From the NCBI RefSeq assembly GCF_001194135.2, contig NC_068985.1:114147948-114211947 (forward strand): a stretch of 64,000 nt of DNA. Direction: 5' to 3'. Source of the stretch: Octopus bimaculoides. Lineage: Eukaryota. Positions 35,691-52,655 of this stretch are shown piece by piece (the first letter of the stretch is position 1; each line of letters starts with the position of its first letter). A program made the translations under genes and the position numbers. The notes under the pieces were generated by a model. The model made no database searches. It was not told where the DNA came from and saw nothing but the letters and a program-made list of their open reading frames with translations.

Positions 35691-36098
35691 GAAGGTTTGG
35701 AGGTGATGTACAGAAATTATATAGAAAAAAATTAAGGTACTNNNNNNNNNNNNNNNNNNNNNNNNNNNNNNNNNNNNNNNNNNNNNNNNNNNNNNNNNNN
35801 NNNNNNNNNNNNNNNNNNNNNNNNNNNNNNNNNNNNNNNNNNNNNNNNNNNNNNNNNNNNNNNNNNNNNNNNNNNNNNNNNNNNNNNNNNNNNNNNNNNN
35901 NNNNNNNNNNNNNNNNNNNNNNNNNNNNNNNNNNNNNNNNNNNNNNNCACCTAATCGTGTAGGATTTTCAAATCCTACACGATTAGGTGAAAAGCGCTTT
36001 ATTTAATTTATAAAACATGTGACATTAATAAAAATCTGTAAATGTACAAACATCCAGATTTCTGAGTACCTTAATTTTTTTCTATATATATATATATA

Positions 36099-36289
36099 TT
36101 TTCCAAGTGGCTGTTTTCCTATGTGTTCGTTCCGTGGTCTGTAGTTCATTATTCTAACGTTCTGTACCCTGATATGCATCTATATACACATGTAGATGTA
36201 CGTATGTACATATATGTGTGTATACATGCATATATATTCTTTGTATTATTACATTATCGAACGCACGCGTCCTTTTTACAAGTAAGTTT

Positions 36290-45142: not shown

Positions 45143-45328
45143 TTTGATGATGGTGCCAACGGTAGTTCCAATGAAAGCCACAGTGTAATCATAAGTTATC
45201 GATACAGCTACAGCAGAAGCTATTATCGAAGGGAAATCCTGTGTAATGGGAACCTCCACTGGTACAGTCCCAGCTATTGGTGTGTTGATATCTAAAGTTC
45301 CACAGTAATTGTCATCAATTTGGAGTGT
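45143..45328 (-). CDS. PlexA: Internal coding exon of a plexin (plexin-A-like), C-terminal part of the Sema domain
   Basis: On the minus strand: polypyrimidine acceptor tttcttctttaaaatctctttcAG, a 186-nt open phase-0/0 exon, then donor AAA|GTAAGA. Translation TLQIDDNYCGTLDINTPIAGTVPVEVPITQDFPSIIASAVAVSITYDYTVAFIGTTVGTIIK matches the plexin-A motif as I recall it (IDDNFCGLDIN.P.GG...YSVVFVGT.SG.LKK). Assigning the A subfamily rather than another plexin needs BLAST. Confidence 0.85.
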
Positions 45329-49205: not shown

Positions 49206-50587
49206 TTTCAGCTTAGCATCAATAATTATGTAACAATAAAGTCATCATTCACCATTTTAACATCCTCATTNNNNNNNNNNNNNNNNNNNNNNNNNNNNNN
49301 NNNNNNNNNNNNNNNNNNNNNNNNNNNNNNNNNNNNNNNNNNNNNNNNNNNNNNNNNNNNNNNNNNNNNNNNNNNNNNNNNNNNNNNNNNNNNNNNNNNN
49401 NNNNNNNNNNNNNNNNNNNNNNNNNNNNNNNNNNNNNNNNNNNNNNNNNNNNNNNNNNNNNNNNNNNNNNNNNNNNNNNNNNNNGGCCACACTCAAAACG
49501 GTGTATTTTACGTGCCACCTGCACAGGAGCCAGTCCAGTGGCACTGGCAACGATCTCGCTTGAATGACTTTTCAGCTTAGCATCAATAATTATGTAACAA
49601 TAAAGTCATCATTCACCATTTTAACATCCTCATTCACCATTTTAACATCCTCATTCACCATTTTAACATCCACATTTCCATGCTTGCATGAGTTGGACAG
49701 ATTTATTAAAGCATCTTCGCTACAGCCAAAAGCTCTTCCTTGTCACCTACCCTTACCTTTTTCTAAATAAGGTAATATTCCTCTATGACTAGACATGGTC
49801 TCACAGAATAATGGAAATGAATGACTTCAGAAGTGAGCATTATCATTGCAGTGGTCAGGGTATTACACATGCCATGATGAAATACTACCACTTCTGTAGT
49901 TTCTTTGCTCATAAGGGTGGCATAAGGTATGTGTAAGTATAGGAGGTAACAAACCAAATTTTCCTGGACTTTGTGTGACTTTATCCTCTATTGCTACTCT
50001 TCATTAATGTTTTTACTGCTAAAATCAAGCCATCTACTCAAAATTTCATAAACATTAACAAGGGAAAGCAGTTTTATATACCAAAATACCTCTTTTATAT
50101 ACAAGGGGTAGCTGAAAAGTTCCTGGCTGTAACCCTCATGACAATGGTATTTTTATCAGGTAACTAGGTTGCACTGACAGTAATTATCTTGGCAGAGATC
50201 AGTAATTAGTGCATGACAATGGTTCAGCATATATCTATGTCAACTGCTTCATAGCATGCACTGTTTATTTATGTAAACTTTCATCCCTGCGAGGACTGTA
50301 AATTCAACAAAACTGGTGAAGCTGGAGGCGACCGTAAATTCCATGAAAGACCAGAAGAATTTGCTGAATGTGTACGAATTTGATAGGAAGTCATAGTCAA
50401 AATGGCAGTGTAACTGCCAAAACTGCTGCTTTTCTACTATTATGGTGATTAAGTCTCGAACTGGGTTGGAAAATTTTACATGAAGAATAGTCTAACAAAC
50501 CTATCAGATTCCTTGAAATTTGCACGGTGACCTTTATTATTGATTCTGTGAGTGATAGTGGATATATATATATATATATATATATAT

Positions 50588-50840
50588 GGTCCGTGGGAAG
50601 AGCCATTTTAACGATGCGTCCTGCCTTACTCTTCGAAACGCGCCTGTGTTAGAATGGGGGCAGCTGATGAAGGAAAATGTTCTCTATGTGGCTTGTGTGT
50701 TTTCTTTACTCTGGTGATTATCATTTTTTGTCTATGTTTTCTTTGCAATGTCCTGTACCTAGATATGCACCTATACATACAGGTAGACGTAGGTATGCAC
50801 ATACCTGTATGTATATATGCATATACTCATTTATTATTTG

Positions 50841-50850
<10 letters not shown>
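50588..50850 (+). mobile_element. ~250-bp hammerhead-carrying dispersed repeat, copy B (probably Penelope-like/retrozyme-type non-autonomous element)
   Basis: Homologous to 26226-26435 (+) and 51801-52045 (-); flanked by (TA)n. The link to Penelope-like elements is inferred from their known association with hammerheads. Confidence 0.6.
50615..50675 (+). ncRNA. Putative hammerhead ribozyme, non-circularly permuted (copy B)
   Basis: TGCG-TC (50615-20), CTGCC (50621-25), CTTC-GAAA-CGCG (50631-42), GGCAG (50659-63), CTGATGA (50664-70), A-GGA. Stem I is CTGCC/GGCAG, stem III is ACGCG/TGCGT, and stem II is GGA/TTC after an extra A. Confidence 0.7.
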
Positions 50851-50882
<32 letters not shown>

Positions 50883-50984
50883 TAATAATAAGGGTGATAA
50901 ATTAGATATTAATTTAATTAACACCAATTTAAAACCAGTGGCCTAGCAGAAAGAAAATTCTGAAAATTCAGAAAAATTATATTA

Positions 50985-51287
50985 CATACATATGAGAAGG
51001 GATGACCACTAAGTGGACATCTATTATGCTAGAAATAGACCATCTACAGTCAAACCACAAAAGAAAAGAATGTTCTCCAGGGAAATTCAGCACACACCAG
51101 AACATGAACAAGACAAAAGAAAATATACAAAAAATGACTAATTCTTTATTTTTGTACATTTTCATTTGTCTTGTTCATGTTCTGAATTTCCCTGGAGAAC
51201 ATTCTTTTCTTTTGTGGTTTGACTGTTGATGGTCGATTTCTAGCATAAAGGATGTCCACTCAGTGGTCATCCCTTCTCACATGTATG
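50985..51287. mobile_element. Foldback MITE with ~140-bp inverted arms and TA flanks
   Basis: catacatatgagaagggatgaccact...aagacaaaagaaaat versus atttgtcttgttc...agtggtcatcccttctcacatgtatg. TA at 50983-84 and 51288-89. Confidence 0.75.
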
Positions 51288-51447
51288 TAATATATATATA
51301 TATATTATATATACATCAACCAGTACACAAACAGGTACAAAACTGCTGCAGATAGGGTTGTGTATATTCTCATCTGATTCAAAGCAAGTACATAGGGCAT
51401 GTAAATTTATGTCAACTGATGTTATGGGTTTATAGGTATCGCAAAAG

Positions 51448-51620
51448 ACCTGGTTGGAGGCCCAACCTTCTGAGTTCTTTTACAGGGCTTAGAAAAACTG
51501 GAGGACAGCTGCAATAAGTGAATGAATCTGAGAGAGGAATAGGTTGATTAAAATCCTAATTAACTGATCCCCCTGTATTTTTTTTAAATCCAAAACCAGG
51601 AACTTTTTAGCACCCCTTCG
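51448..51620 (+). mobile_element. Decayed mariner transposase C-terminus plus right TIR
   Basis: TWLEAQPSEFF / LQGLEKLEDSCNK*MNLREE*VD* (frameshifted) resembles the mariner C-terminus, e.g. TWLDGQ.SEFFLSGLQKLEQRAKKCIELRGEYVE. It is followed by accaggaactttttagcaccccttcg|TA. Confidence 0.65.
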
Positions 51621-51715
51621 TATATATAAAACAGCATGTAATCTATCGAAATATATACATCTATATATATTTATATTCAAGAGTATGTATGTATCCGTGT
51701 GTGTGAGTGTATATT

Positions 51716-51800: not shown

Positions 51801-52045
51801 TAAATAATACAAATAATAAATGAGTATATGCATATATACATACATGTATGTACATACCTACATCTACATGTATATATAGATGCATATCTCGGTACAGGAC
51901 GATGCAAAAAAACGTGGACAAAATGGTAAACAGAGTACAGAAAACACACAGGCCACATAAAGAACATTTCCTTCATCAGCTGCCACCATTCTAAAACTAA
52001 GCGTTTCGAAGAGTTAGGGCAGGACACATCGTTAGCATGGCTATA
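51801..52045 (-). mobile_element. Hammerhead-carrying dispersed repeat, copy C
   Basis: The reverse complement aligns along the length of copy B (roughly 80-85% by eye). Confidence 0.65.
51969..52028 (-). ncRNA. Putative hammerhead ribozyme, non-circularly permuted (copy C)
   Basis: Minus strand reads gatgtGTC CTGCC ctaactcTTC GAAA CGC ttagttttagaatggt GGCAG CTGATGA A GGAaatg. It has the same core segments and pairings as copy B, with a G-U wobble in stem III. Confidence 0.7.
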
Positions 52046-52093
52046 NNNNNNNNNNNNNNNNNNNNNNNNNNNNNNNNTAACATTTACTTTACC

Positions 52094-52369: not shown

Positions 52370-52442
52370 TAGATAGATAAGGTCCAACCCATGCCAGCAT
52401 TGGCAACAGACGTTAAATGATAGTGGTGATGATGATTGTATG

Positions 52443-52655
52443 TGCCTTATCTTCGAAACGTCAGGTTAGAATAGGGGCAGCTGATGAAGGAATATTCCAA
52501 GTGGCTTTCCGTTTTCCTATGTGCTCGTTCTGTTGTCTGTAGTTCATTGTTCTAATGTCCTGTACCCTGATATGTATATATATACACATGTAGATGTAAG
52601 TATGTACATTTATGTGTGTATACATGTATACATATTCTTTGTATTATTATTATTA
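52443..52655 (+). mobile_element. Hammerhead-carrying repeat, second subfamily (copy D), cleavage-site segment degraded
   Basis: tgccttatcttcGAAAcgtcaggttagaatagggGGCAG-type segment followed by CTGATGA aggaatattcc. The body matches 36099-36290. Confidence 0.55.

What the first reader, a model, noticed from the sequence alone, without database searches (positions are those of the whole stretch)
51969..52030. Second intact permuted hammerhead (copy C) on the plexin sense strand
Seen: the minus-strand copy keeps GTC|CTGCC, TTC-GAAA-CGC and GGCAG-CTGATGA-A-GGA while the linkers have diverged from copy B (ctaactc vs ttactc; ttagttttagaatggt vs gcctgtgttagaatggg). One stem III pair changes from G-C to G-U, a structure-compatible substitution. 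Inference: if the plexin gene spans this position (the exon at 45143-45328 is internal, and no upstream exon was found nearer), this ribozyme would be transcribed in the pre-mRNA intron ~6.7 kb upstream of the exon. It could cleave co-transcriptionally between 52023 and 52022 and affect processing of an axon-guidance receptor transcript.
Basis: partly seen in the sequence, partly recalled or inferred. Interest (0 to 1): 0.75.

Follow-up and report, generated by a model that had tools for sequence, protein, structure and literature searches.

The report
Hammerhead-like motif in SINE-like repeat
The sequence does hold every piece of a rearranged ("type SGC") hammerhead ribozyme, but it is one copy of a short repeat scattered through this genome, has two very weak helices and no evolutionary support, so it is an untested ribozyme candidate belonging to the repeat, not a demonstrated regulator of the plexin gene.

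Summary
The minus strand 52027-51969 reads GUGUC|CUGCC-7nt-UUC GAAA CGC-16nt-GGCAG CUGAUGA A GGA, and a twin lies at 50616-50674 on the plus strand. The block order (site, GAAA, CUGAUGA) is the type-SGC non-circular hammerhead permutation published in 2023 (PMC10085705). That includes its extra nucleotide after CUGAUGA.

The motif is not plexin-specific. It sits in a ~260-bp interspersed, SINE-like repeat with five copies in this window, two of them 5'-truncated.

Evidence for a working ribozyme is thin:
- Stem II is 3 bp with no stability of its own, and stem III of copy C is about -1.5 kcal/mol.
- There is no compensatory change. The single G-C to G-U change is a CpG-to-TpG transition.
- Rfam gives no hit, and no relatives could be retrieved from any collection.
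- The GAAA and CUGAUGA blocks are the two most conserved stretches of the repeat, yet copy D keeps both while lacking the cleavage-site block.
- Loose hammerhead-like matches arise by chance at about 0.5 per Mb.

Copy C probably does lie in a plexin-A-like intron in sense orientation. Validated SGC ribozymes are slow even at 25 mM Mg, so an effect on the transcript is unlikely.

Verdict: passenger repeat copy carrying a real but unproven ribozyme candidate. I put self-cleavage at about 30%.

The parts
51804..52045 (-). Repeat copy C: one insertion of a ~260-bp SINE-like interspersed repeat. Its 5' end abuts an assembly gap.
   Evidence: nhmmer profile of the four copies, E=6e-76; blastn 86% identity to copy B; N run at 52046-52077.
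52018..52027 (-). Block S: GUG (stem III 3' strand), U16.1, C17, predicted cleavage between 52023 and 52022, then CUGCC (stem I strand).
   Evidence: Read directly; descriptor match.
52011..52017 (-). S-G linker CUAACUC (7 nt; 6 nt in copy B). Published SGC ribozymes have 2-4 nt here.
   Evidence: supplement alignment of PMC10085705.
52001..52010 (-). Block G: UUC (stem II strand), GAAA, CGC (stem III strand). Lies inside TCTTCGAAACG, the second-longest invariant run of the repeat family.
51985..52000 (-). G-C linker UUAGUUUUAGAAUGGU (16 nt). AGAAU at 51992-51988 could form a fourth, stem I/II-bridging helix with 51965-51961.
   Evidence: duplex energy -1.7 kcal/mol; about 26% chance of such a 5-bp helix arising by accident.
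51969..51984 (-). Block C: GGCAG (stem I strand), CUGAUGA, extra A, GGA (stem II strand). Identical in all four copies that reach this region, and the longest invariant run of the family.
51961..51965 (-). GUUCU: possible 3' strand of the fourth helix, or alternatively part of a local hairpin AGGA-AAUG-UUCU.
50587..50845 (+). Repeat copy B, full length, antisense to the plexin exon. Carries the better-paired twin motif at 50616-50674 (stem I up to 7 bp, stem III G-C instead of G-U).
52416..52653 (+). Repeat copy D, about 65% identical to the others. Blocks G and C are kept (1 change in 27 nt) but block S is replaced (6 of 13 nt differ), so it has no cleavage site.
26225..26433 (+). Repeat copy A, 5'-truncated just after stem I. 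It lacks block S and keeps blocks G and C.
36095..36251 (+). Repeat copy E, 5'-truncated downstream of all three blocks.
45143..45328 (-). Internal exon of a plexin-A-like gene (Sema domain, equivalent to plexin-A2 residues ~369-425), flanked by an AG acceptor and a GT donor.

Best explanation
Copy C is a passenger insertion of a high-copy, ~260-bp SINE-like retroposon that landed, in sense orientation, in a long intron of a plexin-A-like gene. The retroposon family carries near its 5' end a sequence that satisfies the minimal definition of a type-SGC (site-GAAA-CUGAUGA) hammerhead. That arrangement is therefore a trait of the repeat family, or of one subfamily, and not of the gene. Shown: the motif, the repeat family, the 5'-truncated copies, the orientation, and the conserved G and C blocks. 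Inferred: the element spreads by LINE-type reverse transcription from its 3' end. Blocks G and C are the family's selected core for a reason that does not require the upstream cleavage-site block. As RNA, copy C is at best a slow, inefficient self-cleaver that does not measurably change plexin pre-mRNA processing.
For: Five copies lie in 58.9 kb of non-gap sequence, on both strands. Two are truncated at the same (5') end, and the copies are flanked by microsatellites. The motif occurs only inside these copies. Stem II (GGA/UUC) has no stand-alone stability: +1.8 kcal/mol, or -0.3 if extended through an A.C mismatch. Stem III of copy C is -1.5 kcal/mol. A published SGC ribozyme has -6.2 and -4.8 kcal/mol for the same stems. 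There is no compensatory change in any helix; the only helix difference between B and C is a CpG-to-TpG transition. Copy D keeps blocks G and C (1 change in 27 nt) but has 6 changes in 13 nt across block S (Fisher p=0.003), so G and C are conserved without the cis cleavage site. Copies B and C both retain at least 20 nt upstream of the predicted cut, so their RNA templates were uncut there. Validated SGC ribozymes cleave at 0.007-0.19 per min at 25 mM Mg. Liberal hammerhead-like matches occur by chance at 0.53 per Mb per strand, so a repeat library of a few Mb is expected to hold some. Rfam gives no hit at gathering score, and no hammerhead hit at E<=10.
Against: The compact SGC arrangement is rare by chance: 0 hits in 55 Mb, and about 6e-9 per position by my own arithmetic. 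All core nucleotides, G10.1-C11.1, C15.2-G16.2, a GUC triplet and the class-typical extra nucleotide after CUGAUGA are present. The GAAA and CUGAUGA blocks are the two longest invariant runs of the family (11 and 15 nt; the next longest is 6), and they retain two CpGs in a CpG-depleted window. Differences between B and C avoid the helix and core positions (1 of 36 versus 8 of 24, p=0.002). A single uncorroborated type-GCS sequence did cleave in vitro in the published study. Nested-fold predictions that sequester the core are not informative, because validated SGC-1 and SGC-3 show the same behaviour.
Confidence: 0.6

Rival explanations
1. The repeat family carries a genuine, independently evolved type-SGC hammerhead that self-cleaves the retroposon RNA, or host read-through transcripts containing it, after GUC. 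Copies B and C are still competent. Copy C would then nick the plexin pre-mRNA intron as a side effect.
For: There is a full core and the correct block order, including the extra nucleotide after A9 seen in nearly all published SGC sequences. The compact descriptor gives 0 hits in 55 Mb of random sequence. Blocks G and C are the most conserved parts of the family. Substitutions between B and C avoid the helix and core positions. A possible fourth helix, AGAAU/GUUCU, sits in the position required in SGC-3. By my own recollection, hammerheads are already known in animal retroelements (Schistosoma Sm-alpha, Penelope-like elements, retrozymes).
Against: Stem II is not stable on its own and stem III is weak. 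There is no covariation. Copy D conserves G and C without S. Cleavage 37 nt inside the element would remove its own 5' end, and the copies seen derive from uncut RNA. The rate of loose chance matches is not negligible. No relatives could be retrieved to test conservation.
Confidence: 0.3
2. Copy C has been co-opted as a gene-specific, co-transcriptional regulator of the plexin transcript.
For: It has sense orientation and a probable intronic position about 6.7 kb upstream of the exon.
Against: It is one of five repeat copies in the window and the less well paired of the two motif-bearing ones. It shows no extra conservation relative to its antisense twin. The expected rate is too low relative to intron lifetime (inference). 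No orthologous locus carrying the repeat could be examined: the related plexin locus L001 has no copy.
Confidence: 0.03
3. The resemblance is accidental. TCTTCGAAACG is a tRNA-type T-loop / Pol III B box of a tRNA-derived SINE head and GGCAGCTGATGAAGG is an unrelated conserved core domain. Block S completes the picture by chance in one subfamily.
For: TTCGAAAC resembles the B-box consensus GGTTCGANNCC (my own knowledge). G and C are conserved in copies that lack S. Chance matches are common under liberal rules.
Against: There is no tRNA-like match by ARAGORN or by Rfam at E<=10 for either head. The sense strand of the A/B/C subfamily has conserved runs of 4-7 T downstream of block C, which would terminate Pol III. 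The coincidence of CUGAUGA, three complementary helices and tight spacing is about 1e-6 per family by my arithmetic.
Confidence: 0.3

Closest known systems
Type-SGC hammerhead ribozymes (HRIMA-1 motif and type-SGC variants; Eckert, Friedrich, Weinberg & Weinberg, NAR 2023, PMC10085705)
   Same: Same 5'-to-3' block order (cleavage site, then GAAA, then CUGAnGA). All conserved core nucleotides are present, stem I is 5 bp, and there is an unpaired extra nucleotide between CUGAUGA and G10.1. Only a few nucleotides lie upstream of the cut. A possible helix joins the 5' flank of stem I to the 3' flank of stem II.
   Different: No sequence homology: HRIMA-1 has an invariant AUGUU/AACAU stem I. Here stem II is 3 bp including a G-U, against 5 G/C-rich bp, and stem III is 4 bp against 5-6. 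The S-G linker is 6-7 nt against 2-4. The candidate fourth helix has 3-nt spacers on both sides and only -1.7 kcal/mol. The setting is a genomic animal repeat rather than metatranscriptome RNAs associated with hairpin ribozymes. There is no covariation and no assay.
GCS-1, the single type-GCS candidate from Caballeronia peredens (same paper)
   Same: A lone descriptor match without covariation support. It nevertheless cleaved in vitro, slowly (0.014 per min), which shows that such matches can be active without being shown to be biologically relevant.
   Different: Different block order, bacterial intergenic location, single copy.
Hammerheads of animal retroelements: Schistosoma Sm-alpha SINE-like repeat, Penelope-like elements, metazoan retrozymes (from my own knowledge; PLE paper listed)
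   Same: A hammerhead carried by a short, high-copy, non-autonomous repeat. The core-proximal pairs (CGUC|CUG, CAG-CUGAUGA, GAAA-CGC) are like those of the Sm-alpha ribozyme as I recall it.
   Different: Those are canonical type I ribozymes found by Rfam-type models, often in tandem arrays, and are biochemically validated. This motif is non-circularly permuted, dispersed, and undetected by Rfam.
Discontinuous hammerhead in mammalian Clec2 3' UTRs (Martick et al. 2008; from my own knowledge)
   Same: A hammerhead embedded in a Pol II gene transcript of an animal.
   Different: That one keeps the canonical strand order with a very long insertion, is conserved at orthologous loci, and was assayed. 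This one is a repeat copy with rearranged order.

Membership tests
Hammerhead ribozyme (any permutation) | Conserved core: C3 U4 G5 A6 N7 G8 A9, G12 A13 A14, A15.1-U16.1, H17 not G | tested here: met
   CUGAUGA 51979-51973, GAAA 52007-52004, U 52024, C 52023. G10.1-C11.1 and C15.2-G16.2 are also present.
Hammerhead ribozyme (any permutation) | Three helices I, II, III abutting the core | tested here: inconclusive
   Stem I is solid (5 bp, -6.8 kcal/mol). Stem III is 4 pairs with one G-U (-1.5 in copy C, -3.4 in copy B). Stem II is 3 pairs with one G-U and is not stable alone (+1.8, or -0.3 if extended).
Hammerhead ribozyme (any permutation) | Covariation supporting the helices | tested here: not met
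   Only two motif-bearing copies exist. There are 0 double changes and one one-sided C/U change at a CpG. No further copies could be retrieved.
Hammerhead ribozyme (any permutation) | Site-specific self-cleavage giving 2',3'-cyclic phosphate and 5'-OH ends | not testable with these tools
   Needs an in vitro transcription / cleavage assay with a G5 mutant control.
Hammerhead ribozyme (any permutation) | Match to Rfam hammerhead covariance models | tested here: not met
   0 hits at gathering score over the window. No hammerhead hit at E<=10 around copies C and B. No hammerhead model matched; models built on the classical circular permutations would in any case not be expected to align a non-circular one.
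Type-SGC hammerhead (PMC10085705) | Block order S, G, C on one strand | tested here: met
   The any-order scan labels both copies SGC.
Type-SGC hammerhead (PMC10085705) | Extra unpaired nucleotide between CUGAnGA and G10.1 | tested here: met
   A at 51972. Published alignments show CUGAUGA-U-G in nearly all rows.
Type-SGC hammerhead (PMC10085705) | Short linker (typically 3 nt) tying stem I to stem II | tested here: inconclusive
   The linker is 7 nt in copy C and 6 nt in copy B. It becomes 5 and 4 nt if stem II is extended to GGAAA/UCUUC through an A.C mismatch.
Type-SGC hammerhead (PMC10085705) | Fourth helix joining the other sides of stems I and II (required for cleavage in SGC-3) | tested here: inconclusive
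   AGAAU (51992-51988) can pair with GUUCU (51965-51961): 5 bp, -1.7 kcal/mol, with 3-nt spacers. It is present in B, C and (shifted) D and broken in A. A helix of this size has about a 26% chance of arising by accident.
HRIMA-1 motif (homologous family within type SGC) | Invariant stem I AUGUU/AACAU and association with hairpin-ribozyme-bearing metatranscriptome RNAs | tested here: not met
   Stem I here is CUGCC/GGCAG, and the setting is a genomic interspersed repeat.
SINE (short interspersed retroposon) | Short, dispersed, multi-copy, with 5'-truncated copies sharing the 3' end | tested here: met
   Five copies of about 160-260 bp on both strands. Copies A and E are truncated at the 5' side.
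SINE (short interspersed retroposon) | Small-RNA-derived head with an internal Pol III promoter | tested here: not met
   No tRNA found by ARAGORN. No tRNA, 5S or 7SL hit at E<=10. T4-T7 runs lie in the sense strand. Only a B-box-like TTCGAAAC is present.
SINE (short interspersed retroposon) | Target-site duplications | tested here: inconclusive
   Microsatellites flank the ends where they can be read: both ends of copies B and D, and the 3' end of copy C. The 5' end of copy C is lost in the assembly gap at 52046-52077, so no duplication could be read.

The most novel reading that the evidence does not exclude
An abundant animal retroposon family carries a functional, independently evolved type-SGC hammerhead. 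This would be the first non-circularly permuted ribozyme encoded in a eukaryotic genome. The window density of about one copy per 12 kb would scale to tens of thousands of copies if it holds genome-wide, which was not checked. Blocks G and C would form a conserved catalytic module, and sense-oriented intronic copies such as copy C would occasionally nick host pre-mRNAs.
Probability: 0.3. Interest if true: 0.75.

Novelty: new member of a known kind. Interest (0 to 1): 0.4.

Why it matters
Non-circular hammerhead permutations are so far known only from environmental metatranscriptome RNAs and one bacterial sequence. A working example inside a high-copy animal repeat would show three things: the rearranged topology evolves repeatedly, it exists in eukaryotic genomes, and standard covariance-model scans miss it. 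It would also add a self-cleaving RNA to very many introns. If the motif is inactive, it is a useful warning. Minimal hammerhead descriptors match chance sequence at roughly 0.5 per Mb, and a match inside a repeat is multiplied across a genome. Either way, the plexin-specific reading is not warranted.

Tried and rejected
1. Rfam: gathering scan of the window and permissive scans around copies C, B and D gave no hammerhead, tRNA or other credible family. The weak mir-297 and snoRNA hits are simple-repeat or chance matches.

2. Canonical hammerhead reading: the hairpin AGGA-AAUG-UUCU after CUGAUGA could be a stem II, but no GAAA follows it, so there is no type I/II/III ribozyme.

3. More copies for covariation:
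- Pattern scans of viral, metagenome and GTDB collections found only unrelated coding sequences (QLMKE-type).
- Two protein searches with repeat-derived ORFs found nothing.
- The related plexin locus L001 carries no copy.

4. Thermodynamic argument against activity: the nested MFE sequesters the core in copy C, but the same is true for validated SGC-1 and SGC-3, so I dropped the argument.

5. tRNA-derived head / B-box explanation: it has no model support, and T-runs argue against Pol III.

6. C/D-box snoRNA origin of CUGAUGA: there is no D box or terminal stem, and Rfam scores are about 14 bits against a gathering score of 45.

7. A second GUC|CUG site about 105 nt downstream, which would give a G-C-S order: only 4 stem I pairs and 2-3 stem III pairs, and post hoc.

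8. The pseudoknot-hammerhead structure paper PMC11300833 concerns a different variant.

9. The authors' own search descriptors (Supplementary File 1) are not held as text.

Full report
**What is in the sequence.**
On the minus strand the region reads 5'-GAUGUGUC|CUGCC-CUAACUC-UUC-GAAA-CGC-UUAGUUUUAGAAUGGU-GGCAG-CUGAUGA-A-GGA-AAUGUUCUU. A gapped pattern for the three blocks matches exactly twice in the window. One match is at 51973-52025 (-), the finding (copy C). The other is at 50618-50670 (+), copy B. None of 100 shuffles matched.

**What the arrangement corresponds to.**
In hammerhead numbering:
- CUGCC/GGCAG is stem I (1.1-1.5 with 2.1-2.5).
- CUGAUGA is C3-A9.
- GGA/UUC is stem II with G10.1-C11.1, after one extra A.
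- GAAA is G12-A15.1.
- A15.1-U16.1 plus CGC/GUG is stem III.
- C17 is the cleavage nucleotide.

The strand order is site block, then GAAA block, then CUGAUGA block. This is not a circular permutation of the classical ribozyme, so the helices cross. Exactly this order was described and validated in 2023 as the "type SGC" hammerhead (PMC10085705). That study reported 583 predicted examples from metatranscriptomes and cleavage at the predicted site. Disruptive and compensatory mutants showed that stems I-III and a fourth, stem I/II-bridging helix are needed.

The published alignments show stem I of 5 bp, a 2-4-nt S-G linker, stem II of 5 G/C-rich bp, and stem III of 5-6 pairs. They also show an unpaired nucleotide between CUGAUGA and G10.1 in nearly every row. 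The candidate shares the order, the full core, the 5-bp stem I and the extra nucleotide. It has a possible fourth helix in the right place: AGAAU 51992-51988 with GUUCU 51965-51961.

**Where it sits.**
The motif is part of an interspersed repeat. BLAST and an nhmmer profile find five copies in 58.9 kb of non-gap sequence:

| Copy | Coordinates | Strand | State |
|---|---|---|---|
| A | 26225-26433 | + | 5'-truncated just after stem I |
| E | 36095-36251 | + | truncated beyond all three blocks |
| B | 50587-50845 | + | full length |
| C | 52045-51804 | - | 5' end lost in the N gap 52046-52077 |
| D | 52416-52653 | + | about 65% identical to the others |

The shared 3' end, the 5' truncations, the ~260-bp size and the microsatellite flanks are what a SINE-like, LINE-mobilised retroposon looks like. 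I could not show a small-RNA-derived head. ARAGORN finds no tRNA. Rfam gives nothing at E<=10 for the heads of B or D. The sense strand also contains conserved T4-T7 runs. The hammerhead-like arrangement is therefore a property of a repeat family that, at this density, must be very abundant in the genome. It is not a property of the plexin locus.

**Is it more than chance?**
- A descriptor just loose enough to accept the candidate finds only copies B and C in the window and nothing in 55 Mb of composition-matched random sequence. My arithmetic gives about 6e-9 per position and strand.
With all six orders and blocks within 100 nt, random sequence gives 204 matches in 384 Mb, or 0.53 per Mb per strand. 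Of these, 30 are SGC.
- At that liberal rate a few Mb of repeat consensus per genome is expected to contain one or two accidental matches, and a high-copy family would then be seen in almost every window. At the compact rate an accident is unlikely (about 0.02 per genome).
- The honest position is between the two. Chance cannot be dismissed, but it is not comfortable either.

**What the copies say.**

In favour:
- Across A, B, C and D the two longest invariant runs are TCTTCGAAACG (block G) and GGCAGCTGATGAAGG (block C), at 11 and 15 nt. The next longest is 6 nt.
- Copy D has 1 change in these 27 nt against 35% divergence overall (binomial p=1e-4).
- Both CpGs of block G survive in all four copies, although the window has CpG o/e 0.30.
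- Between B and C, 1 of 36 helix/core positions differs against 8 of 24 linker positions (Fisher p=0.002).

Against:
- Copy D has the same-length segment GATTGTATGTGCC where B has GATGCGTCCTGCC. That is 6 of 13 positions changed, with no UH site and stem I broken (p=0.003 against its G and C blocks).
- So at least one lineage conserves G and C without the cis cleavage site. Whatever keeps those blocks constant does not need it.
- There is no compensatory change in any helix.
- Copies B and C both carry at least 20 nt upstream of the predicted cut, so the RNAs that gave rise to them were not cleaved there.

**Helix quality.**

| Helix | Candidate (kcal/mol) | Published HRIMA-1 example (kcal/mol) |
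|---|---|---|
| Stem I | -6.8 | -1.2 |
| Stem II | +1.8 (GGA/UUC); -0.3 (GGAAA/UCUUC with an A.C mismatch) | -6.2 |
| Stem III | -1.5 (copy C); -3.4 (copy B) | -4.8 |
| Fourth helix | -1.7 | -3.7 |

Stem II is the weak point. It is not closed by a loop here, so it gets no help from a hairpin. Copy C is the poorer of the two motif-bearing copies, with 5 stem I pairs against 7 and a G-U in stem III.

I first thought the nested MFE counted against activity, because it pairs GAAAC with GUUUU and AUGAAGGA with UUCUUUAU in copy C. The same calculation on validated SGC-1 and SGC-3 also buries the core, with penalties of 6.5 and 3.5 kcal/mol against 7.4 and 4.2 here. That argument carries no weight and I dropped it.

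**Gene context.**
- The exon at 45143-45328 (-) translates to a Sema-domain segment. Its only PDB matches are plexins, best plexin-A2 residues 369-425 (E=2e-5).
- It has an AG acceptor and a GT donor, so it is internal, and about 365 residues must be encoded upstream.
- In a related species' locus (L001) a ~1.2-kb exon encoding the N-terminal ~400 residues lies 6.4 kb upstream. tblastn with that product finds nothing between 45.3 and 64 kb of the window. The gaps there are at most 512 N.
- Copy C is therefore very probably inside an intron of at least 18.7 kb, in sense orientation.
- The functional consequence does not follow. Validated SGC ribozymes with far better helices cleave at 0.007-0.19 per min at 25 mM Mg. 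At cellular Mg, and within the few minutes an intron exists, a weaker version would cut a small fraction at most (inference). Nothing distinguishes this copy from the family's other copies.

**Comparative data.**
I could not obtain any.
- Exact-pattern scans of the viral, metagenome and prokaryotic genome collections returned only unrelated coding sequences.
- Searching the protein collection with open frames that run through the repeat found nothing.
- The only homologues of the exon are 50-60% identical, so the source species is not represented.
- The paper library holds no report of an SGC hammerhead in a eukaryotic repeat.

**Conclusion.**
The object is a passenger copy of a SINE-like repeat.
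- Most likely (about 0.6): at this locus it does nothing beyond being intronic repeat sequence, and it is at best a feeble self-cleaver.
- About 0.3: the family carries a genuine, convergent type-SGC ribozyme. This would be a noteworthy first for eukaryotic genomes, and a simple transcription/cleavage assay plus a genome-wide alignment of the family would settle it.
- About 0.03: a plexin-specific regulatory role.

Noticed in passing
window 50749-50758 (+), 51898-51889 (-), 52557-52566 (+): The repeat has a second GTC|CTG site (GTCCTGTACC, identical in copies B, C and D; GTCATGTACC in A) about 105 nt downstream of the CUGAUGA block. With blocks G and C it would give a G-C-S order, but only 4 stem I pairs and 2-3 stem III pairs. 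Probably coincidence.
   Followed up: partly
window 26232-26242, 50631-50641, 52012-52002 (-), 52451-52461; and 26256-26270, 50659-50673, 51984-51970 (-), 52476-52490: TCTTCGAAACG and GGCAGCTGATGAAGG are the two longest stretches identical in all four repeat copies (11 and 15 nt; next longest 6), even in the 65%-identical copy D, which lacks the cleavage-site block. Both CpGs are retained although the window has CpG o/e 0.30. What these blocks do for the repeat is unexplained.
   Followed up: partly
window 50978-51294: Near-perfect inverted repeat between copies B and C: arms 50978-51094 and 51178-51294 (117 nt, 94% complementary), with an inner pair 51098-51133 / 51149-51184. It looks like a foldback or MITE-like element.
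   Followed up: partly
window about 50300-50440 and 51440-51625: Stretches that, from memory, resemble the 3' part and terminus of a mariner/Tc1-type transposon. The 2 kb around the finding is a patchwork of mobile-element fragments and microsatellites.
   Followed up: no
whole window: Strong CpG depletion (o/e 0.30) with TpG/CpA excess (1.39), GC 36.8%, 21 assembly gaps (5139 N) and very frequent (AT)n, (GATA)n, (CT)n and (CA)n microsatellites. The plexin exon has only 50-60% identical relatives in a 5.8-billion-protein collection, so the source is a poorly sampled animal lineage.
   Followed up: partly
window 52046-52077: A 32-N assembly gap abuts the 5' end of copy C, 18 nt upstream of stem III. 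The upstream context of the candidate, and the true 5' end of this copy, are unknown.
   Followed up: no
L001 2309-3598 and 10001-10270: In a related species (ENA contig of 1.4 Mb) the homologous plexin exon lies 6.4 kb downstream of a large exon encoding the N-terminal ~400 residues. That 20-kb locus contains no copy of the repeat.
   Followed up: partly
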